Assembly: GCA_951406725.2 (NCBI GenBank)
Contig: OX597823.1
Location: 38,212,001-38,460,000, forward strand
Reading direction: 5' to 3'
Length of the DNA: 248,000 nt
Source of the DNA: Octopus vulgaris
Taxonomy: Eukaryota
Positions 12,780 through 240,170 of this stretch are shown one piece after another. Each line of letters starts with the position of its first letter. Position 1 is the stretch's first letter. The translations under genes were made by a program, and so were the position numbers. The notes under the pieces are model-generated. The model was not told the origin of the DNA and made no database searches. It saw only the letters and a list, made by a program, of their open reading frames with translations.

Positions 12780-12780
<1 letters not shown>
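11612..12780 (-). mobile_element. RTE LINE 3' fragment with (GAT)n tail
   Basis: RKGVGRNSVRCTQCKLWIHKRCS motif; recurrent RTE 3' UTR ending ...aacccatgccagcatgga...gatgatg. Confidence 0.85.
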
Positions 12781-12876
<96 letters not shown>

Positions 12877-12878
<2 letters not shown>

Positions 12879-13896: not shown

Positions 13897-13941
<45 letters not shown>

Positions 13942-14018
13942 ATCTCTCCTCTCCTTTCTGAGTTTCCGTGGCGAAAACATTCGCTGATCGCCTGAGCGAC
14001 GGCAGGTGGTCCGTAACA
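12877..14018. mobile_element. Solo LTR (probably Gypsy-type), ~1.14 kb
   Basis: Begins TG (tgctatgaa) and ends CA (tccgtaaca; reverse complement tgttacgga, matching the start after CpG decay). ATAT on both flanks is consistent with a 4-bp TSD. More GC/CpG-rich than its surroundings. Confidence 0.65.
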
Positions 14019-14801
14019 ATATATATATATACTATTTTCATATTTTTATTACTTGCTCTAGCTGTTTTTTTATGAATATGATGAATCTTTATTAGAAATC
14101 AGTCTTTCTCTCTTTTTGGACCTATCAAAAAGTTTGAATTGTTCTCTTCTGAACTTACTTTTTCCCTATATATATATGTCAGTTTCTGCCTACCAAATCC
14201 ACTCACAAGGCTTTGGTCAGCCCAAGGCTATAGTAGAATACACTTGCCCAAGGTGAACCTAGAACCATGTGTTTGGGAAGCAAGCTTCTTACCATACAGC
14301 TATGCCTATGTTGTGCTACAGAAGATTCCTAATTATTATCTATGTTGTGTCTTGGATTGTGTTCCATTAAGTTATTTATATGTATACATTTAAATATAAA
14401 TAATATAAGTTAACAAGAATATATGAAAGCTCAAATAAATATTGGCATGGTCATTGATGTCTTCACACCCAACCTGCCAAATATTGTGAATTACCAATGG
14501 AGAATATATTACTAAACTGCTTGCTAACATGATGAGGTCATTGTGTAATTGCTAAACCTGCTCAGTCAGGAGGTGTTACTTCAATTATTGAAGATCATTT
14601 TATTGATAATTGGCAGTGTTGATGAATTTTCATGTCTTATGTTATTAAGTGATTACTGAGTGAACCAATGAGAGAGAGAGTGAGAGTATGTGTGTGTGTG
14701 AGAGAGAGAGAGAGAGACAGAGAGCTAGCTTCTCACAAATTCTTGACTTACTAGAAGTCACAGCTACTTTCTTTAATCAAGAAGGATACAGTATATCTAT
14801 C

Positions 14802-14882
<81 letters not shown>

Positions 14883-15949
14883 CAAAATTGCATTTGACCC
14901 TCTGGCTGACAACTTATGAAGAGTTGGTAGCCTTCTGTGTCTGTTTTCTGTTTATGCATTTATTATTTTTTTTACCTTATATATATATGTGTGCATGTAT
15001 ATAGGTTTGTGTGTGTGTGTAAATATATATATATAGGTGCAGGCATGGGTATGTTGTAAGAGGTTTGCTTCTCAGCCACATCATTCCCGGTTCAGTTTCC
15101 CTGCATGACACCCAACCTGGCTCCTTCCCCTACTCTCACCCATACTGTCACACCTGCCCCTACCTCTCCAACACCACTATCATCACCAGCATCCACCACT
15201 GCCCCTATCACATCACCAACTCTTTTATCTGCACCTACAGCAATGTCATCTACTACATCTACAGCTCTGTTTGTCCTTCCTTGTACATTGGTCAAATGGA
15301 ATGTCGTTTAGCTGATTAGTTCACTGAGCATCTCTGAGACATCGGACTTGGCAATGGGACCCCGGTCTCATGCCACTTCCATTCAACGGCTCATTTGCTA
15401 CAACATCTGTTTATGTTCAGACTGTCTTTGCACAAAGGTCACTCGGAATCCCACCATGCCATGAACAGGAATTAATATTCTCCCTTCATTCTTTTGTTCC
15501 TTATGACCTTAAATCACCACTCTGCTTCATCTAGCACCAACCCCACACATATTCCCACACACTTTCCACCTTTAAGTACCCCTTCCCTCCACCCCCACAC
15601 TTGTTCACTGCCTAACTCAATACCCTCACCACACACACCATTATATGAACACCCCTATGCACTGTTCAACTCAGTACCCTCACCATTATGCACACTCACA
15701 TGCACATACATTCACACATGTCTCACTCCACACACACCAGCACCCAATACCTCCCAACTCCTAACTCTCATCACCCCTATCCCACCTCGCACTTCCATGC
15801 ATTCCTCCAGAACACACAGTATTCACTCCTAAAAATACATGCAATGCATATGCACACAACATGCCTGAACACAGACGATATACACACTCACACACAATAT
15901 CTATAGACACATACAACATTTGCTATCTAGCCACAGTAGAAACAGAGAA

Positions 15950-75334: not shown

Positions 75335-75980
75335 TGAATTCTTCACTGTACTCGTTGCCAACCCTCACCTTACTGACAGCATCTCTGTACATGGCTTGTA
75401 TAGCTCTCACTAACCATTCATCTATCCCTAGTTTCCACATTGACCACAAGATAAAGGATTGGGAGACCCAGTCATAGGCTTTCTCCATGTCAGTGAAAGC
75501 TAGGTACAGAGGTTTATCTTTGGCTAGGTATTTCTCCTGCAGCTGTCTTACCAGAAATATAGCATCAGTGGTGCTTTTCCCCGGCACAAACCCAAACTGC
75601 ATCTCATCTCGACTGACTTTCTCCCTACTTAGTTGGGCTATGACACTCTCCGTGACTTTCATTACCTGATCCAATAACTTGATACCTCAGTAATTATTTG
75701 TATCTAATAATGCATCATCTTTACCTTTGTATCAGTTGACTATGGTGCTGCTACACCAGTCATTGGGTATGACTCCTTCATGTACCACCTCACTGACTAT
75801 ACGGGTGACTAGACTATAGCTGACACCACCAGATATTTTTAGCATCTCTGCGATGATTCCTGATGGGCCGGGGGCTTTCCCTGTTTTCATATTCTTAATT
75901 GCTTTATCTACCAATGTACTGTCAATTCAGATAGCTGGTCTTGCTGTTGGGTCAACATTCAGAAAACTCTTTCTCCCATT
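75335..75980 (-). pseudogene. RTE RT fragment
   Basis: MKTGKAPGPSGI, QFGFVPGKSTTDAIFLVRQLQEKY. Confidence 0.9.
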
Positions 75981-95207: not shown

Positions 95208-98200
95208 TAGATATGTTGTAAAGACATTTCATAGAGATAAAACAACAGTTTAGCTCATACAAAAATGTGAAAAATGTGTCTATTTTTTAAGGAAAGATCA
95301 ATCACAAATGTTGTTTGTTATGAAAATAATGGAAAAGCTCTCAAGGGAAACTTCAACAACAAATAGCTGCATCATTATGTACATGTCATTCTGCATAGGT
95401 GAGTTATTGTGAGAAGTATAGAGTTCTTTTCATAGTCAAACAATTCTACAATTCATGCAGACACACACATATCCACAAAAAAAAAATGGTTTGAAAAATA
95501 TATAAAATCCAAACACACCACACCCAAAACATGGCACTGCATTAGTAACAGAGCTAAGTGCATACACAGAGTGATATATTTCTATTTTTATAGAAATACG
95601 GGTTTTTTCTCTCAGACAATGTTGAAAGCTGCTTAGCATAGGTCAAAGACTGATGGTTAGATTTGTTTTGTAATGAAAGTTAGCAAGATTTTAAGATATT
95701 CCCTAAATACATCAACTGGCACTTGACTCTTGAAGCTGAAATTTTAGATTATAACATCTTAATAAATACCCTGGCACAGATATCGAATATTCTCCTTCTT
95801 ATCTACTATATTACCACAATTATACATATATATCTTTTATCTTTTGTCTTTATATATATATAATTTTTTGTCTTTTATCTGTTTCAATTATTAGATTGAG
95901 GTCATGCTGGGGCACTACCTTGAAGAATTTTTAGTCGAATGGATTGACCTCAGTACTTATTTTTAAGTCTGGTACTTATTCTATTGTCTCTTTTTGTCGA
96001 ACTGCAAAGTTACAGGGATGTAAATAAACCAAGCGGTGATGGGGGACAAACACAGACACAAAGACACTTCCCCCACACACATACACACAACCACACACAT
96101 ATGATGGGCTTCTTTCAGTTTCTGTCCACCAAATCCAGTCACAAGGCTTTGGTTGGTCTGAGACTATAGTAGAAGACACTTGCCCAAGGTGCCTCACCAC
96201 TGGACTGAACCTGGAACCATGTGGTTGGGAAGCAATGATTCTAATTACACATCCATGCCTAGACCTATATAAATATACATATGCATACACACACACACAC
96301 ACAGATACACATATATATTCTCTTTCATTTAGTTCTCCATTAGTTTTGTCCAGAAGCTGTGGCCATGCTGGGGCATTGCCATCAGCATTAATGCTTGTTT
96401 ATTTTGGCCTTTTTTTCCGGACCTAGCTCTGGAATTGGCCCTGAAGTAGTGATCTGGACAGAGCTGCCCATCTTTACATTTCTTGCTGTGATAGGGGTTT
96501 TTGAGGTATCTCAAAAAAGAATTTGTCTAAATGTTCTATGAACACATCCTGTCTATTTCTTGTATATCTCTGAGGTCTTTTAGTATTGAAAAGTTGCAGT
96601 CCTTTGAACTGTAAGCTGTTAGAATATATGCTGGATTGAGAGGGTGAGATTTTTGGTACTATGCAGTGACATCCAGTCTGGTTATTGGTATAGATTTCAA
96701 TTCCAAAGTTGGATGCTACACCTTGTAGGACCTTCCGTGGATATATAACTGCATATCTTTCACTTTCTATTTCTAGGGAGTAGAACCTCAGTCCTTTTAG
96801 CCTGCTCCAAGTAACTCACCTGTTGCCACAAGGCAATCTTCTTGGTGTTGTGGCATTGATTGCCTTAAGTTCTGCTTCTGAAGTTAGGTTAATGCTTACA
96901 CCACCACACCCACCATCATCATTTAATGTCCTTTTTCCATGCTGGCATGAGTTGCATGATTTGTCAGGAGCTGGCAAGTGGGCCACCCTTCCTAACACCA
97001 ACCACTTTACAGAGTATACTGGGTACTTTTAACATGGCATCAGCACCAGTATCGGTTCTGCTGTGGTAAATGGGTCTTCTTGAGTACAGCAACTTACTAG
97101 GTATCTTGGTCCTTTGCCATCTTCATAAGGCTCAGTGTCTTGAGATTGGCCTTCAGTACTTTATCCCATATCTTCCTGGGTCCCTTCTTTCACAAGTTCC
97201 ATCTTTCACAAGTTCCACTTTAAGTGATAAAGTCTTCTGTATGCAACTGCTTACATCCATACGCATCCTTTATTGCTGAGCATTTTCTCTCAGATATCCA
97301 GTTCTTGGGTGCAGTCTGTCTAAGAGTGTCTTAATTTCAAGGCTGCTCTATCAAATCAATTCTGGTACTTATAGTGAAGCAGGATATGCATGCAACTTGA
97401 GGTCCCTCTAATATGCCTCACTATTTTGTGATATTTAGTGGCATCTAAGAGCTAACATCATTGGTGATCCTCAATTTTCAATCACATGATATTTATACAT
97501 TTGAGAACTCTAATATTTTGATGTTATTTTGAAAAATACTTTCTGAAATTTTGAAAGATACTTTCTGTCCAACAGACAACAGGTGGTATGGAATAAACAA
97601 GTGAGAGCAAAATCTCCTTTCTAACATATTTTCTGGTGTTTATGAAACTAATTAAATATAAGTCTATGGGTCCAATATGCATCCAAGTTGTTTCATGATT
97701 ATTCATTTGTTGGAAAAATGAGTTTGTAACAGAAAAGTCAAGTTCATTATAAAAAGACAGCAGATGCTGTACATTGTTAATCAATCTAACCACACCATGT
97801 TTGCCAATCACATCAGACTGATTCTCATAACTAGAACCTAGTTTAATACAGAGGTATTAAAGCCACCAAGCAGTAGGAACTTTGTTATTAGGTGGGTTTT
97901 TTTTTTGTGTATGTGTGAAACGACAAACAGTAAACTACCATTAAAAAAATGTCTACATTGAATAAACTGAGTTTTCCACCCTCAGATCTAACTTCTATGT
98001 CACAATAAATAACTTTTATGTCACAATAAATTTTCTACCTCACCTTATCCAGTAGAACATGTAGATTTCTAGTATTTCTCCTTCTTTGACTGCCAAGAAA
98101 ACAAGTTTCACTGAGAGCAGCATTATTAATACTATATTTGATTAAGACTTGTGAGACAAGAGTCTTCTTCCTCTCAAACCAGAAAGCATCATCTTAAAGA

Positions 98201-121995: not shown

Positions 121996-122140
121996 CTATC
122001 TATAAATGCTCTAATATCTACACAGCCTTGGTTTTTTATCTTATTATGCAAAAAATTCTTATATATTTATATATGTATATATATAATTATATATATGTAT
122101 ATATATTTATATATACAAGTATATATATTTATATATACAA

Positions 122141-122177
<37 letters not shown>

Positions 122178-122178
<1 letters not shown>

Positions 122179-124020
122179 TTGAAACAGTTCAGTGCACTAC
122201 AAGATAGGACCCCTCCTCCAAAAGGATGGCTCCCTCACAGATAGTCCAACTAAGATCAGTTAGATGCTGAATTACCAGTTCAAAAGTGTCTTTACCACTC
122301 CGTTGGAACACAGACAAGTGAACGAACCAGTGGACTTCTTTGCCGCCCCACCTACAACCAGCGAGGCGGTTACAATAGAATGTATTGACATTAGCGAAAA
122401 AGATGTACTACTAGCCATAGATGAAGTGGACACAAACTCAGCTGCTGGTCCTGGCGGTTTCCCAGCCATCCTCCTCAAAGCGTGTAAGCATGCCCTGACA
122501 AAACCCCTCAAGATTCTCTTCCAGAGCTTTCTTGCGAATGTCAAACTGCCAAGCAAGCTGAAGGAGGAATAATATGCCCAATACATAAAGGGGGAAGTAG
122601 AGCAGATGCCAAAAACTATAGGCCTATCTCTCTGACTTCACACATCAGCAAAGTCATGGAACGGATAGTCAGAAAGAAACTAATCGCATTCTTTGAGGAA
122701 AATATCTTGTTGAGTGATACCCAGCATGGTTTTCGACCAGGTAGGAGCTGCCTGACCCAGCTCTTACAACATTATGACTGGGTGTTGAGGCAGTTACTCA
122801 ACAAATCAAATGTGGACGTAATCTACCTTGATTTTGCAAAAGCTTTTGACAAGGTGGATCATGGTATGATGTGCCATAAACTGTGTGACTTCGGCATAGC
122901 TGGAAAACTTGGAGTGTGGTTGCATGACTTCGTGAAAGATAGGAGTCAGGCAGTAGTGGTTAATGGAGCCACCTCTATGAACACACAAATAGTGAGCGGT
123001 GTTCTTGGGCCATCTTGGGACCACTGCTTTTTATAGTGGCCCTCTCAGATATGCCCTCAAATGCCGAGAGAGCCACTCTGGCCAGCTATGCAGACGATAC
123101 GAAAGTCTCGCAGAAAATACAGAATCCCAGCAATGTTGCACACCTGCAGCAGGAGTTGGACTCAATCTACAGATGGGCTGAGGATAATAATATGCAGGTT
123201 AATGCTGAAAAATTCCAGGCCCTGCGCTACCAGCATCCAAAACTGAATATTAAACTTACAGAATACACCGGTCCACAGGGAATTTCAATCCCAGATCCTA
123301 AGTCTGTGAGGGACCTGGGTATCGACATGAGTGATGAAACCTCTTTCCAAGTGCACATTACCAGGATGGTGACAAAGTGCAGACGACTGGCTGGGTGGAT
123401 CCTAAGAACATTCAGAACCAGAGATAAGGAAACCATGATGGTCCTCTGGCAGACATTCGTCCTCAGCCACCTGGATTACTGCTCAAAGCTATGGTCACCC
123501 ACCAGTGTAAAATTAACAGCGGACCTTGAAGCAATCCAGAGATGATTCACAAAGAAGATCGTCCCTTTGCAACCGCTCAGCTACTGGGAAATGTTGAAAC
123601 AGCTAAGACTCTACTCCCTGGAGAGAAGACGGGAGAGGTATGCAGTAATATATGTCTGGAAGATCCTGGAAGGAATTGTGCCAAATTTTGGCATTGAAAG
123701 CTACACCAATGCTAGAACGGGACGACACTGCATAGTGCCAAAGATCCCAGCAATGCCATCACGCTTCAGGACCAGCTTCTGCAACAGCCTGGGTTTCAAG
123801 GGCCCACAGCTTTTTAATATTCTCCCAAAGAGTCTGAGGAACTTGCACAAAGTAGATGTAGCGGTTTTTAAATCAAAGCTGGACATCTTCCTGTCAAGAG
123901 TCCCAGATGAACCTACCTCACGGCAAGAGGTGCAAATGAGAGTAGCTATATCAAACTCCATTCTTCACCAAGTGCCACATATTAGACGAGGTTCGTTGTA
124001 ATAACAGTGTAGCACAAAAC
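122178..124020 (+). mobile_element. 5'-truncated CR1/L2-type LINE
   Basis: [44 protein letters not shown]; few disruptions; preceded by (TA)n. Confidence 0.92.
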
Positions 124021-124024
124021 GGTA

Positions 124025-124217
124025 TATATGTATGTCCGGGTTCCAGTTAATAATTTTCCTTATGACATAAATACACTATTGGATTTGAATTTAAAATTAT
124101 CATTATCTTCCTCACGGTTGGTCAATTGAGAGCCAATGATAATTTTAAATTCAAATCCAATTGTGTATTTATGTCATAAGGAAAATTATTAACTGGAACC
124201 CGGACATACATATATAC
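124025..124217. repeat. Hairpin with ~70-bp arms
   Basis: tatgtccgggttccagttaataattttcc... / ...ggaaaattattaactggaacccggacata. Confidence 0.88.
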
Positions 124218-125125: not shown

Positions 125126-127950
<2,825 letters not shown>

Positions 127951-130900
127951 ATTATGTTGTCTTATGTATACAATTAGAGTGTTGCCTTGGCTTCAGTTAA
128001 TTTTGAAAACAATGGAAAATTTAGTAAAATAACTTAGTCATTATTAGCTGGTGTTTGAGGCATAAATTAGTCTGCAATTCTAATGTATTTTAATTTAAAT
128101 AACTTTAGAACAAGAAGTTTATATCATAGAATCAGGGCAGTCTCAGATGGATTAATATCAATTAGGTTAAAGTTGATTATAATAGAGAAATGATAGTGGG
128201 ACATTTTTATCATTAAAGAATTAATTCTGAAATCCAGTATCTGAGAGGTTAAATGATCTCTTCAAATATTCATTTATTATTGAAATTCTTATTGTCCAGC
128301 CTACATCAAAATCAATGGCATTTCTGGATTCTACAAGTAATTGTGGTTCCTGATATATTTTAATATTGCTACATTCATCAGAGAAAAGTTACAACTTGTA
128401 AAATGCAAGACAGCTCTCAACCCCAAAGTTTTTGAACTTTTTGGTCAGAATTAACTGAAAACTTTGGAATTGCACTTTCTGCCACAAATTTATTCTTTGC
128501 TAAGCTTCTACAATATGGAATAGGTGTTGGTGTTGTTTTCCAAGTTTATTAGATCTATCCTCTAAGAATTACTTCGGGAACTGCAGCTGTGATGACAGAT
128601 GCTTCCAGTAATTTTCAAAGAAACTAGAGGTACTACCAAACTTTGAGAGAGAGTTAGAAACAGCAGGAAGAAACAACTGAGGCTCAAGAAGTACCATAAA
128701 ATCCAAAGCAGAATTTCAAAGTAAATTCCTGCTATGTTGTCTTGAACATGCTACAAAAAAATAATTACTTATTTGGCTTCCTGGATATATACTAAGGAAA
128801 ACAATCTACTGAAGATGCATTTAAGGGTTGCAAGGATTGTGAAAAATCCTTGTTCATAAAAGAAACGAAAATATTGATACTAAAGATTTACGCCACAAAG
128901 TTAGCAATAACTTGAAAACTTCCAAACTTTATGCTGCTGCATATGTTTCTCTTCATGCAATAAGAACTATTACCGAATATTTCTGATGTTCCTTTCCAGA
129001 CAACTAGTATCAACGGCAAATGGGGAACAATTTCACATAGCTCAAATTTATAAAAACATGTTGTCAACAGTATTACAAAAGTGACTAATTGGTTTAGTAA
129101 CCATGTCAACTGAACTTCTTATTGTTCAATCTGATTAAATTGGTGACAAATTTATAAAGGGTAAGGCATACTAAGACAAATTTTTATGTTCCTGAAAGTG
129201 AGGTTTTGATAAGATTTAAATTTTAACCAGACAGTTCATAAGATTCTGGTATGTTTGTCTTTAAGTAAGATATTGTTGGTTACACTAAGTAAACATAAAA
129301 GGACATAAAAGATATGTGAAGTAAAAGGTTTCAATGTAGTGTTACTTTATAGAAAATACGGTTTCGACCAAGTGTCTTCAGGATCAAAATTATTCCTATG
129401 TCAAAATATTTTTCATTTGTATTTCAGAAAGTTAATCAAACATTGATGCATTATTTATTCTTGCAATTTAAAATAAATTTAGAAGTTTCAAATTTTATGC
129501 CTTTTACTTTTTGTGCTACAAAATGTCTGCTTTAGAAAATTTATCATCATTGTCTTCATCATCATTTAATGTCCTTGTACCATACTGGCATGGGTTGGAC
129601 AGTTTGACAGGATCTGACTGGTCCAAAGACTGCATTATGCTTCACTATCTACTTTGGCATGGTTTTTATGATTGGGTACCCTTTCTAATGCCAATCACTT
129701 TACAAAATGTGCTAGGTGCTTTTTTCATACCATTAGTACCAGTGAAGGCATCACACAGCTTGCAAGAGTTTGAAGTTGATAACTTTTTGGGTGAGTGCAA
129801 AAAAGTTGGTTTATGCTTGGTTGTAAAATAGTCCACACATTGTAAAATAGGCCACACATTGTGATGTCCACACATTGATGTCCACACATTATGATGCAAA
129901 AAAAAAAAAAAAGATGTCAGATGGTTGTAGTCTGCTATAAATGGGTAACTTAACCAAGAAATTGTCATGCTATTGTTAGTTTTCATTGTTTTTGTTTAAT
130001 TGTTCCAAGACTGGATAATCATTGTCAATGTACATAAATCTAATTTAATATACTGCACAGCTGTTATAAATGAACCTCTCTAAATGTGTATAAGATGACT
130101 GTTAATTAAACAAATGCAACTTTCACTAAAGAAGAATGTCTTGATTTAGTTATAATTGGTAATGTTGTTTCAACTTGCATTGTTCATGAAGCTGATATAT
130201 TTTTATGGTATATATATACAAGGTTGAGTAGTTGTGTTTGTAATCTGGTTTGTTTTTGTCATCTGGGATTTTTTTTGACAAATTCATTTTTTTAGAATTG
130301 TTAAACGATTGTATTACATAATCATTGACATCTAGTTTGGGCTATCTGGGTTTTATCTTCAAATTCATTGAACCAAATTTATACATAGTTGTTGTGCAAC
130401 CCCAGAGTATTCTGATCAATTAATTCTAATTTATGCCTAGTATTATACTTTGTATAATATAATTCCTGTGTGTATTTACATTTTGCTTTACCACAAATCC
130501 TTGCTTATTCTCTTCCTGTATGGTGAACAAAGTCATTTCCCTCATACTTTTGGTTCTATTTCCCCATTTTTTTCTCTAAATTTTGAACTGCTGATTTATT
130601 TAACAAATTCTACCTAGAAAAAGGTTGTTGGTATAAAGAATTACTAATATCTAAGAGGGTTAAAACCACACATGAACTTAAATTATGTGGATTAATGAAA
130701 ACAGAATTTGATATATTTCCATTGAAGGAAAGTGTGTTTAATTAATAAGATGTTACAAAGCTGGGAGATATTTTAGCAAGTTTCATGATTGGTTTTGACT
130801 ATTGTATTATAGCTGGTATTTTCTATTTCTGATAAAGTGTTGAATATCTTTTTTCTTTTTATTTATTTCTGCATTTTCTATATTGGAAAGCTAGCTATCT

Positions 130901-196384: not shown

Positions 196385-197956
<1,572 letters not shown>

Positions 197957-198046
197957 TTGATTGATTGATTGATTGATTCTAGTTTCAGCTTATGAGCTGT
198001 GGCCATGCTGGGGCACCGCCATTTGGTGTTGCTACTTGGTTTCACT

Positions 198047-201043
198047 TCATGGAGGCTTTCTAGCAACTGCTATTTGGTGCATGAGAGAGTTCGATGCAGC
198101 TGCCCTCATCTGCCCCTCCTGCCGTGAAGTTGGTTCATCTGGGACACCTGACAGGAAGAGATCCAGCTTCATTTTAAAGACATCTGTATCCACCCCATGC
198201 AGGTCTCTCAGGTTCTTCGGGAGGATATTGAAGAGCTGTGGGCCTCGGAAGCCCAGGCTATCACAGAATCTTGTCCTACATCTTGATGGCAGGTTTGGAG
198301 TCCTAGGCACCACGCAGTGGCGCCCAGTTCTGGCATTTGCGTAACTCTCGATGCCAAAGTTCAGGACACTTCCCTCCAGGATCTTCCAGATGTATATTAT
198401 GGCATATCTTTCCCGCCTACGCTCCAGGGAATATAATTTTAATCTCTTGAGTCTTTCCCAGTAGCTTACATTCTGCATAGAGGCTATCTTCTTTGTGTAG
198501 CTTCGTTGGATCGCCTCAAGTTCTGTGATCAACTTGACACTGGATGGTGACCATAGCTGAGAGCAATAGTCAAAGTGGCTTAGGACAAGTGTCTTCCAGA
198601 GGACCATCATGGTTTCTTGTTCTCTTGTTCTAAAGGTTCTAAGAATCCATCCAGCCAGCCGTCTACATTTCATTGTCAGTTTAGCAACATGTACATGAAA
198701 GGTCGCGTCATCACTCATGTGAATACCCAGGTCACGCACTGATTGTGCCTCTGGGATTGCAATCCCTCCGGGTCCAGTGTATTCATTGGGTATTGCATTC
198801 AGTTTTGCATGCTGATAGTATAAAGCTTGAAACTTTCCAGCATTGAACTGCATGCTATTCTTTTCAGCCCACTTGTATATTTCGTCCAGCTCACATTGCA
198901 GGTGTTTAGTGTCCTCAGGGTTCTGTATTGCCTGTGAAACTTTTGTATCATCTGCATAACTTGTGATCGTGGCTCTCTGCGTGGCTGAGGGCATGTCTGA
199001 GAGGGCCATTATGAACAGTAGTGGTCCCAGAACAGTGCCCTGCGGAACACCGCTCACTATTTGTGTGTTAATGGAGGTGGCCCCATTGGCTACTACCACC
199101 TGACTTCTATCCTTCAGAAAGTCATGAAGCCATTCTCCCAGTTTTCCAACTATGTTGAGATCACGCAGTTTGTGACATATCATTCCATGATCGACTTTAT
199201 CAAAGGCCTTTGCAAAGTCGAGATATATCACTTCCACATTTGAGTGGTTGAGCAGCCGTTTCAGCACCCAGTCATAGTGTTGTAGGAGCTGAGTTAAACA
199301 GCTTCTCCCTGGTCGGAAACCATGTTGGGTGTCGGGCAGCAAGTCATTCTCTTCAAGGAAGGTGATCAGCTTCCTTCTGACTATTCGTTCCATGACCTTG
199401 CTGATGTGTGAGGTCAGAGAGATAGGTCTATAGTTCTTGGCTTCCGCTCTGCTACCTCCTTTATGAATGGGGCATATTTTACCTTCCTTCAGTTTTCCTG
199501 GAAGTTTGCCAGCTGCAAGGAAGCTCTGAAAGAGGAACTGCAGTGGTCTTGCTAGGACTCTCTTACATGCTTTTAGGAGGATTGCCGGGAATCCATCGGG
199601 GCCAGTAGCTGAGTCTGTTTTCATTTCATCTATAGCCTTGGTTACATCGTCTTCCTTTATATCGATGTAATCTATCGTCGCCGCCTCTGATTTTATATCT
199701 GCAGTGGTAAAAAAGTCAGTTGGATTGGTGATTTGGAGATGCCCAAGGGGTGGAGTGAAAACACTCTTGAATTGCTCATTCAGTATTTCACTTACCCTCA
199801 TTGGTTTTCCTGTAAGTGTGCCATCCTTTTCGAGGAGTGGCCCTATTCTACAGTGCACTGTAGCTGTTTCTTTGGCATACCTGTAGAAAGCTCTGGGGTT
199901 AGATTTTATGTTTTCTATAGCCCAGGCTTCTTTGTCTGCTCTTTCTTTTTCATGGGAGAGTTGCAGACATTTTTCGATTTCCAACAGTTTTATTTTTAGG
200001 CGGGACTTTTCACTGCTTTCAATCTGTTTGTTTAGGCGATTTGAAAATTTCGTACGCCGTCTCATTAAAATTTTCCTCTCTCTGGGGATTTTGTTCTTGT
200101 GTACAGTGGCCTTTCTCTCTGGGACACATTTGTAGCATATGGCTTGCATTACAGACATGAATTGTTGAAGTTTCACGTCGATGTCTGGCGAGGAGAGACA
200201 TTTAGGCCAGTTTTGTTTGAGGATCTCTTTCTCAATTTGTTTCCAGTTTGCCTTATGGTAGTTCAAGCTGGAAAGATTTTGAGGGTTTCTTGTAGGCTGC
200301 ATGTCCGTGCTCTCTTTTGGCCCGTACATGGTCAGCTCTATCATGTTGTGATCCGAGAGTAGTGTCGGTGTCACTTTCACATTATGGATGAGATCCATGT
200401 CATTTGTGAAGCAGAGATCCAGTGTGTTACCTGCCCTGGTTGGTTGGAGTATTACCTGCTCCATGTACAGGGTGTTGATGAGGTTCAGGAGGGACCTCGC
200501 CTGTCCTCGTTCACATCTTGTCATTCCTGGGAGAGAAAGGCCCTCGGGCCATCTGACATTGGGCAGATTGAAGTCTCCCATAAGAAGCACACCTATGTGT
200601 TGTTCTAATGTGGTTAGAATTTCTTCTATTTTTATAAGGCAGTCTTCAAACTTGCCCACATGGCTTGGGGCATCTGGAGGGCGATATGTAGCACACACAA
200701 CTACATCAAGTTGCCTAATATGTACAATTAGTGTGTCACACACCGAGTTTGAGTATGACAAGAGGACCTGGGGTGTGAGGTCCTCACGGATGTACATAGC
200801 AACACCTCCATGACTCCTTTCTTTCCTGTCGGTCCGTAGTACAGCATACTGTGGTATGTGTAACTCCGCATCTGCTATGTCCGGTTTCAGGTGCGTTTCT
200901 GTAAGTGCTATGCATAAGGCTTGATTGCATGCAACAAAGTCTCTCAGGAACGGGATCTTTGTCCTGTTACTGAGTGTTTGCAGTCCTCTGATGTTCAGTA
201001 GGAGTATCGAGGTGAGGTGTACGTTGTTGCCGGCGGTGTCCAT
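198047..201043 (-). CDS. LINE ORF2: APE endonuclease plus reverse transcriptase (998 aa from MDTAGNN; track ORF opens at 201151)
   Basis: [45 protein letters not shown] (APE); [36 protein letters not shown] (RT); no stops. Confidence 0.95.
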
Positions 201044-201906
201044 CCTGTGTCTGTTTGCTGTGGTGGTCTGGTATATAGTGGGTAGTCCCACCTGCGGGCT
201101 TGGGTTTGATGAAGCCAGGTCAGCTGCTGTACAATCTTTTGTGCCATGCACAAAAAAGATTGTTGCTCAGCAGCTGCTCTTTCGACAACATCATGTTGGC
201201 TGTTTGTGGCGCGCACAACATCTGCGTACCTCCGCTTTGGGGCAGGTGGTGCGTGGTCCATCCCTTTTCTTTGTGTTGATGGTTTGTCCATCTGCCTCGT
201301 GTCTCTGTGGCAGGGTCCCCGATGTGCAAAGCGGCAGCCTGCACCTTCCTTTCCATGCCAGCAGGAACCTCTCAGGTAGAACATACACACCCGTGTGCGC
201401 TGTTTGGTTCCATCCTTTGCGGTTCCACTTCTATTTCTGGTTGTTTCACTCTTTGGTCCTGCTTGAGCTTTTTCTTTTCCTTTAGCTCTTCCAGTCCTTC
201501 TTTTAGTTCTTCTTCCTCCCTCTACCTCTTCACCGGGTTCTCCGTCTCCATGGCCCTTGCTGCCGGTTGGAGAACTTGCACCTGGGTTCACTTCCCGGGC
201601 AGGTTTCTCATTCAAAACCTCCTCCCGGGCGTCCACCAGGTGGGGGTGACTTCTTTCATCGTCTCCATTCTTGCCATCTTTGCCCCGCTCGTTCTCAAAG
201701 ATGGCATCAAGTGCGCCAATGTGCGACCGTACAAGCGCATATGAGCGCACGAATTCCTGTCTCTTTCGCTCCATCTGAGCCGCTGTCCTCTTGTAGCCTC
201801 TGCTCTTCAGCGCAGCCGCAATCACCTCGCTAGGGCTATCTCCGCCGGCGCACTCCCATGCTCGTACGAATAAATCCAGCTCGTCACGTCTCCATGCTCT
201901 GGACAT
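200995..201906 (-). CDS. LINE ORF1 (303 aa): Myb/SANT-like N-terminus, basic low-complexity linker, CCCH zinc finger
   Basis: W..DELDLFVRAW...IAAALKSRGYKRTAAQMERK resembles trihelix/MSANTD domains; CMFYLRGSCWHGKEGAGCRFAH = C-x7-C-x8-C-x3-H; overlaps the ORF2 start by 49 nt. Confidence 0.85.
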   Translation of the reverse strand: MSRAWRRDELDLFVRAWECAGGDSPSEVIAAALKSRGYKRTAAQMERKRQEFVRSYALVRSHIGALDAIFENERGKDGKNGDDERSHPHLVDAREEVLNEKPAREVNPGASSPTGSKGHGDGEPGEEVEGGRRTKRRTGRAKGKEKAQAGPKSETTRNRSGTAKDGTKQRTRVCMFYLRGSCWHGKEGAGCRFAHRGPCHRDTRQMDKPSTQRKGMDHAPPAPKRRYADVVRATNSQHDVVERAAAEQQSFLCMAQKIVQQLTWLHQTQARRWDYPLYTRPPQQTDTGWTPPATTYTSPRYSY

Positions 201907-201959
201907 GCTGGATAATCCGTCTATCCGTTTATCTATCTAATTATGTTCGAGAGAAGACA

Positions 201960-203250
201960 GGAAGATATTAAGGCTAATTAGAAGATAGAGTACTTGAAAA
202001 AGAAATATTAACAATATTAAAGTTTGTGTAAAAACGTTATTTGGGTAAAAACGTTATTTAATCTTAAGGCTAATTAGGGGATAGAGTATCTGAAAATGTA
202101 TTAGCAATATTAATATTATATTAGAGTGTGGATAAAAACGTTGTTTAATCTTAAGGCTAATTAGGAGATAGAGTATCTGAAAATATATTAGCAATATTAA
202201 TATTATATTAGAGTGTGGGTAAAAAAAACGTTATTTAATCTTAAGGCTAATTTGGAGATAGAGTATCTGAAAATATATTAGCAATATTAATATTATATTA
202301 GAGTGTGGGTAATATTAAACGTTATTTAATTTAATCTTAAGGCTAATTAGAAGACAGAGTATCTGAAAAATTATATATACAATATTAAGCAATATTAACC
202401 GTTATTTAATTTAATCTTAAGGCTAATTAGACGTTATTAATATTAAACGTTATTTAATTTAATCTTAAGGCTAATTAGAAGATAGAGTATCTGAAAATAT
202501 ATTAGCAATATTAATATTATATTAGAGTGTGGATAAAAACGTTATTTAATCTTAAGGCTAATCAGGAGATAGAGTATCTGAAAATATATTAGCAATGTTA
202601 ATATTATATTAGAGTGTGGGTAATATTAAACGTTATTTAATTTAATCTTAAGGCTAATTAGAAGATAGAGTATCTGAAGAATTATTAACAATATTAAAAC
202701 AATATTAAACGTTATTTAATTTAATCTTAAGGCTAATTAACAATAATTATTAACAATATTAAACAATATTAAACGTTATTTAATTTAATCCTAAGGCTAA
202801 TTAACAATAATTATTAACAATATTAAACAATATTAAACGTTATTTAATTTAATCTTAAGGCTAATTAACAGTAATTATTAACAATATTAAACAATATTAA
202901 ACGTTATTTAATTTAATCCTAAGGCTAATTAACAATAATTATTAACAATATTAAACGTTATTTAATTTAATCCTAAGGCTAATTAGACGTTATTAATATT
203001 AAACGTTATTTAATTTAATCTTAGGGCTAATTAGAAGATAGAGTATCTGAAAAATTATTAACAATATTAAAACAATATTAAACGTTATTTAATTTAATCT
203101 TAAGGCTAATTAACAATAATTATTAACAATATTAAACAATATTAAACGTTATTTAATTTAATCCTAAGGCTAATTTGACGGTATCAATATTAAACGTTAT
203201 TTAATTTAATCTTAAGGCTAATTAGAAGATAGAGTATCTGGAAAATTATT
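201960..203250 (-). repeat. AT-rich tandem monomer array directly upstream of ORF1
   Basis: About 18 units of variable length (~45-90 bp) built on aaacgttatttaatttaatcttaaggctaatt plus or minus agaagatagagtatctgaaaa; the ORF1-proximal units are the most divergent. Confidence 0.88.
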
Positions 203251-203696
203251 ATATCGAGAACAGATATTGAAAATGTAAACAAACAAAATGACGATCGCAA
203301 CTTTAACTAAGATGTGGGCCTAAGTGAAAGATAAAATAGAATAATAAATAAAATATGAAATAGATGAAATTGATACTTAATCCAACAATGTGGTCTGGAT
203401 TATTTTTTTTTTTGGTTTACGGGATTTTTTTCAGGAGAGATGCTTCTTTTTCTTTCTTGCAGGAGATAACTTGATTCAGTTATTTTTGCACCATGTGCGT
203501 TTCGGCGAAAATGAAAATTACTGTGTATATGTATATATTTATATATATATTTTTAAAAATATTTTTAACCAAAGTGTTGTAGTGATCTCTATGACTTAGA
203601 GTTTTACGTTTTGCAACTACAGTGGGTTATTTCGCCGTTCTATGCAAACTTTTTCACAGAGCAAAGGCAATCACGTCTTTCTCTGCTGAAAACGGA

Positions 203697-204300
<604 letters not shown>

Positions 204301-204396
204301 ATAAAATATTATTAGAGACAAAACCACTATTTTGCAAAACAAACAAGGAAAGACTTAATCAATACATAAAATTTTAATAAATAGTCAAAAAAACCG

Positions 204397-237082: not shown

Positions 237083-240000
237083 TGATTGATTGATTGATTG
237101 ATTGATTCTAGTTTCAGCTTATGAGCTGTGGCCATGCTGGGGCACCGCCATTTGGTGTTGCTACTTGGTTTCACTTCATGGAGGCTTTCTAGCAACTGCT
237201 ATTTGGTGCATGAGAGAGTTCGATGCAGCTGCCCTCATCTGCCCCTCCTGCCGTGAAGTTGGTTCATCTGGGACACCTGACAGGAAGAGATCCAGCTCCA
237301 TTTTAAAGACATTTGTATCCACCCCATGCAGGTCTCTCAGGTTCTTCGGGAGGATATTGAAGAGCTGTGGGCCTCGGAAGCCCAGGCTATCACAGAATCT
237401 TGTCCTACATCTTGATGGCAGGTTTGGAGTCCTAGGCACCACGCAGTGGCGCCCAGTTCTGGCATTTGCGTAACTCTCGATGCCAAAGTTCAGGACACTT
237501 CCCTCCAGGATCTTCCAGATGTATATTATGGCATATCTTTCCCGCCTACGCTCCAGGGAATATAATTTTAATCTCTGAGTCTTTCCCAGTAGCTTACATT
237601 CTGCATAGAGGCTATCTTCTTTGTGTAGCTTCGTTGGATCGCCTCAAGTTCTGTGATCAACTTGACACTGGATGGTGACCATAGCTGAGAGCAATAGTCA
237701 AAGTGGCTTAGGACAAGTGTCTTCCAGAGGACCATCATGGTTTCTTGTTCTCTTGTTCTAAAGGTTCTAAGAATCCATCCAGCCAGCCGTCTACATTTCA
237801 TTGTCAGTTTAGCAACATGTACATGAAAGGTCGCGTCATCACTCATGTGAATACCAAGGTCACGCACTGATTGTGCCTCTGGGATTGCAATCCCTCCGGG
237901 TCCAGTGTATTCATTGGGTATTGCATTCAGTTTTGCATGCTGATAGTATAAAGCTTGAAACTTTCCAGCATTGAACTGCATGCTATTCTTTTCAGCCCAC
238001 TTGTATATTTCGTCCAGCTCACATTGCAGGTGTTTAGTGTCCTCAGGGTTCTGTATTGCCTGTGAGACTTTTGTATCATCTGCATAACTTGTGATCGTGG
238101 CTCTCTGCGTGGCTGAGGGCATGTCTGAGAGGGCCATTATGAACAGTAGTGGTCCCAGAACAGTGCCCTGCGGAACACCGCTCACTATTTGTGTGTTAAT
238201 GGAGGTGGCCCCATTGGCTACTACCACCTGACTTCTATCCTTCAGAAAGTCATGAAGCCATTCTCCCAGTTTTCCAACTATGTTGAGATCACGCAGTTTG
238301 TGACATATCATTCCATGATCGACTTTATCAAAGGCCTTTGCAAAGTCGAGATATATCACTTCCACATTTGAGTGGTTGAGCAGCCGTTTCAGCACCCAGT
238401 CATAGTGTTGTAGGAGCTGAGTTAAACAGCTTCTCCCTGGTCGGAAACCATGTTGGGTGTCGGGCAGCAGGTCATTCTCTTCAAGGAAGGTGATCAGCTT
238501 CCTTCTGACTATTCGTTCCATGACCTTGCTGATGTGTGAGGTCAGAGAGATAGGTCTATAGTTCTTGGCTTCCGCTCTGCTACCTCCTTTATGAATGGGG
238601 CATATTTTACCTTCCTTCAGTTTTCCTGGAAGTTTGCCAGCTGCAAGGAAGCTCTGAAAGAGGAACTGCAGTGGTCTTGCTAGGACTCTCTTACATGCTT
238701 TTAGGAGGATTGCCGGGAATCCATCGGGGCCAGAAGCTGAGTCTGTTTTCATTTCATCTATAGCCTTGGTTACATCGTCTTCCTTTATATCGATGTAATC
238801 TATCGTCGCCGCCTCTGATTTTATATCTGCAGTGGTAAAAAAGTCAGTTGGATTGGTGATTTGGAGATGCCCAAGGGGTGGAGTGAAAACACTCTTGAAT
238901 TGCTCATTCAGTATTTCACTTACCCTCATTGGTTTTCCTGTAAGTGTGCCATCCTTTTCAAGGAGTGGCCCTATTCTACAGTGCACTGTAGCTGTTTCTT
239001 TGGCATACCTGTAGAAAGCTCTGGGGTTAGATTTTATGTTTTCTATAGCCCAGGCTTCTTTGTCTGCTCTTTCTTTTTCATGGGAGAGTTGCAGACATTT
239101 TTCGATTTCCAACAGTTTTATTTTTAGGCGGGACTTTTCACTACTTTCAATCTGTTTGTTTAGGCGATTTGAAAATTTCGTACACCGTCTCATTAAAATT
239201 TTCCTCTCTCTGGGGATTTTGTTGTTGTGTACAGTGGCCTTTCTCTCTGGGACACATTTGTAGCATATGGCTTGCATTACAGACATGAATTGTTGAAGTT
239301 TCACATCGATGTCTGGCGAGGAGAGACATTCAGGCCAGTTTTGTTTGAGGATCTCTTTTCAATTTGTTTCCAGTTTGCCTTATGGTAGTTCAAGCTGGAA
239401 AGATTTTGAGGGTTTCTTGTAGGCTGCATGTCCGTGCTCTCTTTTGGCCCGTACATGGTCAGCTCTATCATGTTGTGATCCGAGAGTAGTGTCGGTGTCA
239501 CTTTCACATTATGGATGAGATCCATGTCATTTGTGAAGCAGAGATCCAGTGTGTTACCTGCCCTGGTTGGTTGGAGTATTACCTGCTCCATGTACAGGGT
239601 GTTGATGAGGTTCAGGAGGGACCTCGCCTGTCCTCGTTCACATCTTGTCATTCCTGGGAGAGAAAGGCCCTCGGGCCATCTGACATTGGGCAGATTGAAG
239701 TCTCCCATAAGAAGCACACCTATGTGTTGTTCTAATGTGGTTAGAATTTCTTCTATTTTTATAAGGCAGTCTTCGAACTTGCCCACATGGCTTGGGGCAT
239801 CTGGAGGGCGATATGTAGCACACACAACTACATCAAGTTGCCTAATATGTACAATTAGTGTGTCACACACCGAGTTTGAGTATGACAAGAGGACCTGGGG
239901 TGTGAGGTCCTCACGGATGTACATAGCAACACCTCCATGACTCCTTTCTTTCCTGTCGGTCCGTAGTACAGCATACTGTGGTATGTGTAACTCCGCATCT

Positions 240001-240170
240001 GCTATGTCCGGTTTCAGGTGCGTTTCTGTAAGTGCTATGCATAAGGCTTGATTGCATGCAACAAAGTCTCTCAGGAACGGGATCTTTGTCCTGTTACTGA
240101 GTGTTTGCAGTCCTCTGATGTTCAGTAGGAGTATCGAGGTGAGGTGTACGTTGTTGCCGGCGGTGTCCAT
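237083..240170 (-). mobile_element. Second, near-identical copy of the 198-203 kb LINE: ORF2 only, with two frameshifts
   Basis: Same (TCAA)n tail. Identity ends exactly at the MDTAGNN ATG. 2-nt deletion near 239357 and 1-nt deletion near 237575 relative to copy 1. Confidence 0.95.

What the first reader, a model, noticed from the sequence alone, without database searches (positions are those of the whole stretch)
200995..201906. Intact LINE whose ORF1 has a Myb/SANT-like (trihelix) domain fused to a CCCH finger
Seen: a 303-aa open ORF1 beginning W-x2-DELDLFVRAW...IAAAL-x2-RGYKRT-x2-Q-x3-K and carrying C-x7-C-x8-C-x3-H. It precedes an uninterrupted APE-RT ORF2. Established: LINE ORF1 types I know of use RRM/CCHC, PHD, esterase or transposase-22-like domains, whereas Myb/SANT-like domains are typical of Harbinger accessory proteins and MSANTD factors. 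Inference: domain capture giving ORF1 a DNA-binding module, which might bind the element's own 5' array or guide target choice. The domain call comes from motif recognition only.
Basis: partly seen in the sequence, partly recalled or inferred. Interest (0 to 1): 0.8.

Follow-up and report, generated by a model that had tools for sequence, protein, structure and literature searches.

The report
Octopus LINE with Myb-like/CCCH ORF1
An intact, recently active octopus jumping gene (a LINE retrotransposon) carries a first protein built from a Myb/SANT-like three-helix domain, a CCCH zinc finger and a long helix, a make-up that I could not find in any published survey of LINE ORF1 proteins.

Summary
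ORF1 (200995-201906, 303 aa) has the quoted motifs. It overlaps an uninterrupted 998-aa APE+RT ORF2 by 49 nt. A 99.5%-identical truncated copy lies in the window, and another lies in Octopus vulgaris chromosome DNA, so the family was active recently.

The N-terminal 75 residues are conserved across at least six diverged octopus LINE families. AlphaFold models them confidently (pLDDT 87.5) as a three-helix bundle. The best Foldseek matches are MYB/SANT/trihelix domains (RAD MYB prob 0.98, GT-1, PHR1). Pfam Myb_DNA-bind_4 is the only family hit but stays below its cutoff (20-22 bits against 27).

The C-x7-C-x8-C-x3-H finger is conserved and resembles RNA-binding CCCH fingers. A 37-residue C-terminal helix is also conserved. 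A distant marine relative has a CCCH-type ORF1 without the Myb-like domain, so that domain looks like a later addition.

ORF2 is nearest to CR1-clade RTs, but clade placement is unresolved. None of the four ORF1 or mollusc non-LTR surveys I read mentions Myb, SANT or CCCH. Repbase and Dfam could not be checked.

The function (nucleic-acid binding, possibly DNA) is inferred, not shown. Verdict: a new variant of a known kind, of moderate interest.

The parts
197958..203700 (-). Inferred full-length LINE copy (about 5.74 kb): 5' leader, 5' tandem array, ORF1, ORF2, 3' UTR and (AATC)n tail
   Evidence: The 3' end is defined by homology with copy 2 and with the O. vulgaris copy. The 5' end is only inferred, from the end of the flanking (TA)n tract.
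203252..203700 (-). Unique A/T-rich 5' leader; its membership in the element is inferred, not shown
   Evidence: It lies between the (TA)n tract and the tandem array. No other copy with a 5' region was available.
201965..203251 (-). 5' UTR tandem array of related monomers (periods 48, 64, 87-90 and 177 bp); it ends 58 nt before the ORF1 ATG
   Evidence: TRF, self-blastn and the sequence itself.
200995..201906 (-). ORF1, 303 aa, intact
201673..201906 (-). ORF1 residues 1-78: basic Myb/SANT-like three-helix domain (helices 7-20, 25-35, 42-60) plus a fourth helix (63-78)
   Evidence: AF2 pLDDT 87.5. Foldseek top hits are RAD MYB (prob 0.98), GT-1 and PHR1. Pfam Myb_DNA-bind_4 is sub-threshold. 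The domain has pI about 10.
201406..201672 (-). ORF1 residues 79-167: poorly conserved, charged, predicted-disordered linker with an R/K-rich stretch before the finger
   Evidence: pLDDT is below 50. The region does not align between families.
201322..201387 (-). ORF1 residues 174-195: CCCH zinc finger with spacing C-x7-C-x8-C-x3-H
   Evidence: The ligands are conserved across families: C191 and H195, plus the non-ligand H184, are invariant, and C174/C182 are lost only in one decayed copy. zf-CCCH scores 0.0067 and Torus 3.1e-5. The family profile matches MBNL1 fingers.
201088..201228 (-). ORF1 residues 227-273: conserved YADAV motif and a long amphipathic helix (237-273)
   Evidence: AF2 pLDDT is about 87. 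The motif 'EQxSFLxMAQxIVxQLTWLH' is conserved.
198047..201043 (-). ORF2, 998 aa from the ATG, uninterrupted; it overlaps ORF1 by 49 nt
200339..201019 (-). ORF2 apurinic-type endonuclease domain
   Evidence: Pfam Exo_endo_phos_2 5.7e-12 and Exo_endo_phos 6.4e-7. The motifs GDFN and SDHN are present.
198722..199468 (-). ORF2 reverse transcriptase domain (YADD box present)
   Evidence: Pfam RVT_1 2.4e-30. The best match in the reference panel is a CR1-clade RT, 40% identity.
197986..198020 (-). 3' UTR double hairpin, conserved across families and shared with short SINE-like elements
   Evidence: RNAalifold. Pair counts: 94% of cells paired against 20-44% in slid controls, and 4 pairs with compensatory changes. 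The motif occurs 10 times in the window against 0 expected.
197958..197978 (-). (AATC)n 3' tail (no poly-A)
   Evidence: The same tail is present in copy 2.
237085..240170 (-). Second copy of the same family, 99.5% identical and 5'-truncated exactly at the ORF2 ATG
125212..127982 (-). 5'-truncated copy of a related family (about 74% aa identity in ORF2); its 3' end abuts (TA)n
122181..123971 (+). Another 5'-truncated copy of that related family; its 5' junction abuts (TA)n and its 3' UTR is interrupted by a foldback insertion

Best explanation
This is a full-length, coding-intact and recently active APE-type LINE of an octopus-specific lineage. Its RT is nearest to CR1-clade RTs. It has a microsatellite (AATC)n tail and a structured 3' UTR, and no poly-A.

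Its ORF1 protein has a modular architecture that the four ORF1 and mollusc non-LTR surveys I read do not describe. From N to C it comprises:
- a basic Myb/SANT-like three-helix domain (residues 1-62, plus a fourth helix);
- a disordered charged linker;
- one CCCH zinc finger (C174, C182, C191, H195);
- a 37-residue amphipathic helix.

Most likely mechanism (inferred). As in other LINEs, ORF1p coats the element's RNA. Here the CCCH finger and the flanking basic segments would replace the usual RRM/CCHC modules as the RNA-binding part, and the C-terminal helix would drive self-association. The N-terminal Myb/SANT-like domain would add a second nucleic-acid-binding surface, probably for double-stranded DNA or chromatin at the integration site or at the element's own 5' repeats.

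The CCCH-plus-helix core seems older. The Myb-like domain seems to have been added at the N-terminus within the cephalopod lineage. ORF2 is probably translated by coupling across the conserved 49-nt overlap. It probably recognises the conserved 3' double hairpin (stringent-type LINE), which short SINE-like elements share.
For: Shown:
- Intact ORF1 and ORF2 with APE and RT domains.
- Copies 99.5% identical in the window and in O. vulgaris OX597814.1.
- ORF1 followed by an overlapping ORF2 in L001, L003, L004, L005 and L007.
- The domain order is conserved at about 30% identity, while the linkers do not align.
- AF2 N-domain pLDDT is 87.5. The Foldseek top hit is RAD MYB (prob 0.98, TM 0.61/0.75, rmsd 2.1 A), followed by GT-1 trihelix, CDC5L, PHR1 and DMAP1 SANT. 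The independent full-length model again ranks a MYB domain first.
- Myb_DNA-bind_4 is the only Pfam family hit by the isolated domain (6.4e-4), by 6 of 21 homologues and by the family consensus (2.1e-4).
- The domain is basic in 20 of 21 homologues.
- The CCCH ligands are conserved. The family profile matches MBNL1 RNA-binding fingers.
- The C-terminal helix has pLDDT about 87.
- The L008 relative has a three-finger CCCH ORF1 without the N-domain and a collinear ORF2 (30% identity, E 2e-73).
- The 3' hairpins show covariation.
- The surveys read make no mention of Myb, SANT or CCCH ORF1, and two literature searches found nothing.
Against: - The Pfam score is below the gathering cutoff (16.6-22.1 bits against 27).
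- All Foldseek E-values are above 0.3.
- A profile search of PDB sequences finds no Myb protein, only a weak ribosomal protein S8 motif (E 0.035).
- The third canonical Trp of Myb repeats is replaced (R/K49, with F52 and Y56 in the core).
- No relative outside this LINE group was found, so homology to Myb/SANT (as opposed to fold resemblance) is not proven.
- The 'later addition' inference rests on a single outgroup element.
- RNA binding, DNA binding and oligomerisation are all inferred from domain type, not tested.
- RT clade placement is an unresolved polytomy on a 9-sequence panel.
Confidence: 0.6

Rival explanations
1. The N-terminal domain is a generic small helical bundle that only resembles Myb/SANT. 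It would serve ORF1p as an RNA-binding or self-association module with no DNA-related role.
For: The Pfam hit is sub-threshold. Foldseek E-values are above 0.3, and EF-hand and PEX14 helical domains appear in the lists. No sequence link to any non-LINE Myb protein was found.
Against: The high-probability Foldseek hits (prob 0.75-0.98, rmsd 2-3 A) are all MYB, SANT or trihelix. The EF-hand hits have prob below 0.4 and rmsd above 5 A. Myb_DNA-bind_4 is the only Pfam family recovered, and it is recovered repeatedly and in register: domain residues 3-61 against profile positions 2-71.
Confidence: 0.2
2. The Myb/SANT-like domain works like a SANT domain. It would be a protein or histone-tail interaction module that tethers the RNP to chromatin or recruits host factors, not a sequence-reading DNA binder.
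For: SANT domains (DMAP1, NCoR, ZZZ3) are among the structural matches. The top hit, RAD, is a single-repeat MYB-related protein.
Against: The domain is strongly basic (pI about 10, net positive in 20 of 21 homologues). From general knowledge, histone-binding SANT domains are typically acidic. The nearly invariant R40, Q44 and K48 lie on helix 3, the position of the recognition helix.
Confidence: 0.15
3. ORF1 is not a true LINE gene. It would be a host gene fragment or an annotation chimera that happens to lie upstream of a 5'-truncated LINE.
For: Public gene models of its relatives are annotated as uncharacterised host proteins. One hit (P0009) is a lipin-like protein with an ORF1-like tail.
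Against: The same ORF1, overlapping the ORF2 start, is found in six loci from diverged families and two species, plus environmental contigs. The named or localised full-length or N-terminal relatives are octopus loci or contigs in which an APE ORF follows ORF1, and most other hits are short unnamed fragments.
Confidence: 0.02

Closest known systems
CR1/L2-group (Jockey-superfamily) LINEs with modular ORF1 (Khazina & Weichenrieder types I-V; Metcalfe & Casane 2014, PMC4120745)
   Same: It has two overlapping ORFs and an APE+RT ORF2 without RNase H. It has a short-repeat 3' tail instead of poly-A and a structured 3' UTR. A 5' tandem array is also reported in some CR1-group elements (PMC13343379). 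The best RT match in the panel is a CR1-clade element. ORF1 modularity and domain swapping are established for this group.
   Different: ORF1 has none of the described modules (RRM, CCHC, Tnp22, PHD, esterase). Instead it has a Myb/SANT-like domain, one CCCH finger and a helix. RT placement within CR1 is unresolved. It could also belong to the unclassified O. sinensis LINE clade mentioned in PMC10294476.
R2 (N-terminal zinc finger + Myb in the single ORF) and R1-clade telomere-specific TRAS/SART (Myb-like region in ORF2) (from my own knowledge; the R2 literature surfaced)
   Same: A LINE-encoded Myb-type module combined with a zinc finger. In those elements the module binds target DNA.
   Different: There the module sits in the RT-containing protein, and the fingers are C2H2/CCHH. 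R2 uses a restriction-like endonuclease. Here the module is in ORF1p of an APE LINE, the finger is CCCH (an RNA-binding type), and no DNA binding has been shown.
Myb_DNA-bind_4 / trihelix (GT-1) and MSANTD or Harbinger-type Myb/SANT-like proteins
   Same: The predicted three-helix fold is the same. The motif register is W..E...L..(A)W ... I..L...G(F/Y).R(T/S)..Q...K...(F/L)...Y. The domain is basic.
   Different: The score is below the family cutoff. The third conserved Trp is missing. No detectable sequence relative exists outside the LINE group, so no donor can be named.
Muscleblind, TTP and PARP12/ZAP-type CCCH fingers
   Same: The ligand order is C-C-C-H, with an aromatic and glycine-rich interior. 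Profile matches to MBNL1 fingers have E 0.005-0.03. zf-CCCH_PARP12 is hit in 4 homologues.
   Different: There is a single finger with an unusual 8-residue middle spacer. The window protein scores below the Pfam cutoff (16.8 against 20.5 bits).
HTH_1-type ORF1 of an L1 in Coccomyxa (Ivancevic et al. 2016, PMC5203782)
   Same: It is a precedent for a helix-turn-helix type domain in a LINE ORF1.
   Different: It belongs to a different domain family, clade and host kingdom, and it has no zinc finger.

Membership tests
Pfam PF13837 Myb_DNA-bind_4 (Myb/SANT-like, trihelix type) | Profile score at or above the curated gathering cutoff (27 bits) | tested here: not met
   16.6 bits for the whole ORF1, 20.5 bits for the isolated domain and 22.1 bits for the family consensus. 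It is the only family hit, and 6 of 21 homologues hit it.
Pfam PF13837 Myb_DNA-bind_4 (Myb/SANT-like, trihelix type) | Three-helix bundle with a helix-turn-helix, superposable on solved Myb/SANT/trihelix domains | tested here: met
   AF2 pLDDT 87.5 with helices 7-20, 25-35 and 42-60. Foldseek: RAD MYB prob 0.98, TMt 0.75, rmsd 2.1 A; GT-1 prob 0.75; PHR1, CDC5L and DMAP1 also listed. Reproduced with the full-length model. This rests on a predicted structure only.
Pfam PF13837 Myb_DNA-bind_4 (Myb/SANT-like, trihelix type) | Regularly spaced aromatic core residues (three Trp or equivalents) | tested here: inconclusive
   W5 and W17 are conserved in most homologues. The third position is R/K49, with F52 and Y56 as the conserved hydrophobic residues of helix 3.
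Pfam PF13837 Myb_DNA-bind_4 (Myb/SANT-like, trihelix type) | Binds double-stranded DNA | not testable with these tools
   There is only indirect evidence: the domain is basic (pI about 10) in 20 of 21 homologues.
CCCH zinc finger (PF00642 and relatives) | Three Cys and one His in the order C-C-C-H, conserved among relatives | tested here: met
   The ligands are C174, C182, C191 and H195. C191, H195 and the non-ligand H184 are invariant, and C174/C182 are lost only in one decayed copy. The spacing C-x7-C-x8-C-x3-H is identical in P0002, P0003, P0004 and P0027.
CCCH zinc finger (PF00642 and relatives) | Profile score at or above the gathering cutoff (20.5 bits) | tested here: inconclusive
   The window protein scores 16.8 bits. 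The relative P0027 scores 26.0 bits. Profile matches to MBNL1 fingers have E 0.005.
APE-type LINE (non-LTR retrotransposon) | ORF2 with an apurinic-type endonuclease followed by a reverse transcriptase, with catalytic motifs present | tested here: met
   Exo_endo_phos_2 5.7e-12 and RVT_1 2.4e-30. L1 ORF2p is matched at E 2e-24 over residues 4-687. GDFN, SDHN and YADD are visible in the translation.
APE-type LINE (non-LTR retrotransposon) | Copies share the 3' end and are variably 5'-truncated; no terminal repeats | tested here: met
   Copy 2, the L007 copy and two copies of a related family are 5'-truncated at different points and share 3' ends.
CR1 clade / CR1 group | The RT domain groups with CR1 references in a phylogeny | tested here: inconclusive
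   The best pairwise hit is the CR1-clade reference A.marissinica_61 (40% identity, 162 bits), ahead of L2-2 (129), CR1-Zenon (126) and Nimb (110). In an ML tree of 13 rows the octopus group (100/100) joins an unresolved polytomy with CR1, Zenon, L2 and Nimb+Ingi. The panel lacks Jockey, Rex1, I, R1, Loa and Tad1.
CR1 clade / CR1 group | No poly-A; short tandem-repeat tail and a 3' stem-loop | tested here: met
   An (AATC)5-6 tail is seen in two copies. The double hairpin shows covariation. PMC13343379 states that poly-A is unique to Zenon among CR1-group elements.
Described LINE ORF1 types I-IV (RRM+CCHC; Tnp22; PHD; esterase) | Presence of at least one of the RRM, CCHC knuckle, Transposase_22, PHD or esterase domains | tested here: not met
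   Pfam at E up to 10 returns none of these for ORF1. AF2 shows no beta-rich RRM-like region. Remote RRMs can escape Pfam, but the predicted structured parts are helical plus the finger.

The most novel reading that the evidence does not exclude
ORF1p, not only ORF2p, reads DNA. Its Myb/SANT-like domain would bind double-stranded (TA)n or the element's own A/T-rich 5' monomers, and so steer integration of this APE LINE into (TA)n microsatellites or regulate its promoter. That would be ORF1p-assisted targeting in a lineage outside the three groups (early-branched, Tx1, R1) where target-specific LINEs are known (PMC4640811).
Probability: 0.12. Interest if true: 0.75.

Novelty: new variant of a known kind. 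Interest (0 to 1): 0.5.

Why it matters
ORF1 proteins are the least understood part of LINE biology, and every characterised type binds RNA through RRM, CCHC or Tnp22 modules. An active element whose ORF1p instead combines a CCCH finger with a Myb/SANT-like domain widens the known solutions for LINE RNP assembly. It also gives a concrete test case for whether an ORF1p can contact DNA or chromatin. It provides a second intact, apparently young LINE lineage in octopus: the octopus-brain LINE study found only RTE and Dong full-length elements (PMC9115989). It also points to the probable autonomous partner of abundant SINE-like elements that share its 3' hairpins.

Tried and rejected
- Word-indexed protein searches with ORF1, with the full-length alignment and with the N-domain alignment returned only 1-3 octopus proteins and no annotated relatives.
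- A profile search of PDB sequences with the N-domain gave only a weak, probably spurious ribosomal protein S8 motif.
- NCBIfam gave nothing for ORF1.
- Rfam gave nothing for the 3' hairpins, only (TA)n artefacts called mir-297.
- An exact look-up of ORF1 in public assemblies found nothing.
- Recovering Repbase reference RTs from the supplements of PMC10294476 failed because the stored alignment is cut. Only nine labelled mollusc RTs could be taken, so clade placement stayed unresolved.
- The O. sinensis 'unknown I clade' sequences were not retrievable, so identity with that clade is untested.
- The run SRR22824287, which holds the two most divergent full-length ORF1s, could not be tied to an organism.
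- I rejected the idea that (TA)n is the element's own tail. Copy 2 ends in (AATC)6 followed by unique DNA, and (TA)n also occurs at homology-defined 5' junctions.
- I rejected strict (TA)n specificity. Copy 2 and the L001 3' end lack it, and SINE-like elements with the same 3' end mostly have only short TATATA after the tail.
Full report
**Observation.** The coordinates 200995-201906 hold an ATG-initiated 303-aa ORF on the minus strand. The plus-strand reading is full of stops. It contains CMFYLRGSCWHGKEGAGCRFAH, i.e. C174-x7-C182-x8-C191-x3-H195. ORF2 starts at an ATG at 201043, 49 nt before the ORF1 stop and in another frame. It runs uninterrupted for 998 aa to 198047. Pfam finds Exo_endo_phos_2 (5.7e-12) and RVT_1 (2.4e-30) in it. 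The nearest solved protein is human L1 ORF2p (E 2e-24 over residues 4-687). The GDFN, SDHN and YADD motifs are visible in the translation.

**The element.**
- Downstream of ORF2 lie a ~60-nt 3' UTR and an (AATC)5 tail ending near 197958.
- Upstream of ORF1, after a 58-nt spacer, is a 1.29-kb array of related monomers with periods 48-177 bp (201965-203251).
- Beyond that is about 450 bp of unique A/T-rich sequence.
- A 600-bp (TA)n tract follows (203701-204303).
- Another (TA)n tract of 290 bp directly follows the 3' tail.

I therefore infer a 5.74-kb full-length copy (197958-203700) inserted into a (TA)n tract. The 5' boundary is an inference.

A second copy (237085-240170) is 99.5% identical and is 5'-truncated exactly at the ORF2 ATG. 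It ends in (AATC)6 followed by unique DNA. A third copy, 99.5% identical at the protein level, sits in Octopus vulgaris chromosome OX597814.1 (L007). So the window is O. vulgaris or a very close relative, and the family was active recently. Two 5'-truncated copies of a related family (about 74% aa identity) are also in the window.

**ORF1 is a bona fide, conserved LINE gene.** An exhaustive HMMER scan of 1.84 billion representatives found 31 proteins. Those that carry names are uncharacterised Octopus vulgaris or O. sinensis proteins. Full-length relatives at about 30% identity (P0002, P0003, P0004) keep the same order of parts. These are an N-terminal ~75-residue domain, a non-alignable charged linker, the CCCH finger, a YADAV motif, and a helix with the motif 'EQxSFLxMAQxIVxQLTWLH'. 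In L001, L003, L004, L005 and L007 the ORF1 is followed by an overlapping APE-encoding ORF2. This excludes a chance ORF, a host-gene fragment or an annotation chimera.

**The N-terminal domain.**
- Sequence level: Pfam Myb_DNA-bind_4 is hit at E 0.011 by the whole protein, at 6.4e-4 (20.5 bits) by the isolated domain, by 6 of 21 homologues independently, and at 2.1e-4 (22.1 bits) by the family's HMM consensus. In that last scan it is the only family returned. All scores are below the curated cutoff of 27 bits.
- Profile searches of PDB sequences find no Myb protein, only a weak ribosomal protein S8 motif (E 0.035) that I regard as spurious.
- Structure level: AlphaFold2 with a 21-sequence alignment gives pLDDT 87.5, with helices 7-20, 25-35, 42-60 and 63-78.
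- Foldseek against the PDB ranks the RAD MYB domain first (prob 0.98, TM 0.61/0.75, rmsd 2.1 A over 63 columns). The GT-1 trihelix domain, CDC5L, PHR1 MYB, DMAP1 SANT and ZZZ3 follow. The interleaved EF-hand hits have low probability and rmsd above 5 A.
- An independent full-length model again puts a DNA-bound MYB domain (PHR1) first.
- Foldseek E-values are all above 0.3, which is usual for a 60-residue helical domain.
- The domain is basic (pI about 10; net positive in 20 of 21 homologues). The nearly invariant R40, Q44, K48 and Y56 lie on helix 3.

I conclude that a Myb/SANT-like fold is well supported as a prediction. Membership of the Pfam family by its own threshold is not met. Homology, as opposed to resemblance, remains unproven.

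**The rest of ORF1p.** The four finger ligands are conserved. C191 and H195 are invariant, and so is the non-ligand H184. C174 and C182 are lost only in one decayed copy. The window protein scores below the zf-CCCH cutoff (16.8 against 20.5 bits). The family profile matches Muscleblind RNA-binding fingers (E 0.005-0.03), and PARP12-type CCCH models are hit in four homologues. The Torus hit (3.1e-5, below cutoff) overlaps the same finger. The full-length model shows two disordered linkers and a confident 37-residue C-terminal helix (pLDDT about 87). No RRM, CCHC, PHD, esterase or Tnp22 domain is detected.

**Evolutionary context.** A contig from a marine metagenome (L008) encodes a collinear ORF2 (30% identity, E 2e-73). 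It is preceded by an overlapping ORF1 (P0027) with three CCCH fingers. The first finger has the same C-x7-C-x8-C-x3-H spacing. There is a C-terminal helical motif and no Myb-like N-terminal domain. This suggests that a CCCH-type ORF1 is the older state and that the Myb-like domain was added later. It rests on one outgroup. No donor protein could be found.

**RT placement.** Nine labelled mollusc RT domains were copied from the supplement of PMC10294476. Against these, the window RT is closest to a CR1-clade element (40% identity, 162 bits), ahead of L2-2 (129), CR1-Zenon (126), Nimb (110) and Ingi (99). In a small ML tree the octopus families form a 100/100 clade on a long stem, inside an unresolved polytomy with those groups. 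PMC10294476 reports 16 O. sinensis LINEs in an 'unknown' clade. Whether this lineage is that clade could not be tested. The non-poly-A repeat tail and the 3' stem-loops fit CR1/L2-type elements.

**3' end.** The last ~35 nt before the tail form two hairpins conserved across five families. The motif occurs 10 times in the window against 0 expected. Six of these are short elements without ORF2 similarity, so they are SINE-like. On 12 sequences, 94% of cells pair against 20-44% in slid controls. Four pairs show compensatory changes, three of them in helix 2. This fits a stringent-type LINE whose RT recognises its own 3' structure and mobilises partner SINEs.

**(TA)n association.** Only 2.4% of window positions lie within 12 bp of a (TA)≥10 tract.
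- Homology-defined junctions that abut such tracts: the 3' ends of the main copy, of the L007 copy and of related copy A, and the 5' end of related copy B.
- The L007 copy's 5' end shows only TATATA next to an assembly gap.
- L005's 3' end abuts a degenerate TA tract.
- Copy 2 (both ends), the L001 3' end and the copy A 5' end do not abut (TA)n.

Five of ten junctions against 2.4% expected gives a binomial probability of about 2e-6. The SINE-like elements mostly show only a short TATATA after the tail. The simplest reading is an endonuclease preference for TA steps. A role for the ORF1p Myb-like domain is possible but unsupported.

**Literature.** The ORF1 surveys of the Jockey superfamily (PMC4120745), of vertebrate CR1-group elements (PMC13343379) and of L1 across eukaryotes (PMC5203782) contain no mention of Myb, SANT or CCCH. 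The gastropod non-LTR survey (PMC11203168) contains no mention of Myb or zinc fingers. Full-text searches for ORF1 with non-LTR and Myb, and for CCCH with ORF1 and LINE, returned only R2, telomere and ZAP papers. The octopus-brain LINE study found only RTE and Dong full-length elements. Repbase and Dfam could not be consulted.

**Verdict.** The element is real and intact. The ORF1 architecture (Myb/SANT-like + CCCH + helix) is conserved and, as far as I could check, undescribed. It is a new variant within the known modular diversity of LINE ORF1 proteins. The proposed functions are inferences: the CCCH finger and basic regions bind RNA, the helix oligomerises, and the N-domain binds DNA or chromatin.

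Noticed in passing
window 197668-197957 and 203701-204303; 125130-125215; 122100-122180; L007:15975-16353: Copies of this LINE group abut (TA)n microsatellites far more often than chance: 5 of 10 homology-defined junctions against a 2.4% background. The full-length copy has (TA)n on both sides. This suggests integration into TA repeats, in a lineage outside the groups where target-specific LINEs are known.
   Followed up: partly
window 197986-198020 (-); also 41719, 42914, 67967, 74658, 95900, 96361, 99398, 125262, 237130: A conserved 3' double hairpin (GGYGGTGC..GCATGGCC + CAGYY....RRCTG) precedes 'AAAC' and the tail. It shows compensatory changes. It is shared by the LINE families and by short SINE-like elements with (TAAAAGA)n-type tails, which are probably non-autonomous partners. 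There is no Rfam match.
   Followed up: partly
window 240168-240170 (-): The 99.5%-identical second copy is 5'-truncated exactly at the ORF2 start codon. This could be coincidence, or a preferred RT stop or an internal start.
   Followed up: no
window 201965-203251 (-): The 5' UTR is a 1.29-kb A/T-rich array of related monomers (48-177 bp) containing repeated TAACGTT and GTTAAT motifs. Related families (L001, L005, L007) instead have CT-rich 5' UTRs, so 5' ends are replaced between families.
   Followed up: no
window about 124020-124215 (+): A roughly 195-bp perfect foldback (MITE-like) element with long inverted arms interrupts the 3' UTR of related copy B.
   Followed up: no
P0009 (447 aa): A lipin-like N-terminal protein model ends in a 66-residue stretch 61% identical to the ORF1 linker (residues 71-138). 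This is either exonisation of a LINE fragment or a gene-model chimera.
   Followed up: no
L007 (O. vulgaris OX597814.1) 254-8210 and 8960-15866: Two LINEs of this group lie head-to-tail, separated by an assembly gap, inside an 8-kb (TA)n-rich region. This looks like a nested insertion hotspot.
   Followed up: no
window 197000-197668: A 670-bp (CA)n tract directly follows the (TA)n tract at the element's 3' side. The compound microsatellites in this region are very long.
   Followed up: no
window 96361-96872 (-), 9142-10017 (-), 75411-75911 (-): There are further, more distant LINE ORF2 fragments (27-41% identity). The one at 96361-96872 carries the same 3' hairpin motif, so the 3' structure predates the split of these families.
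   Followed up: no
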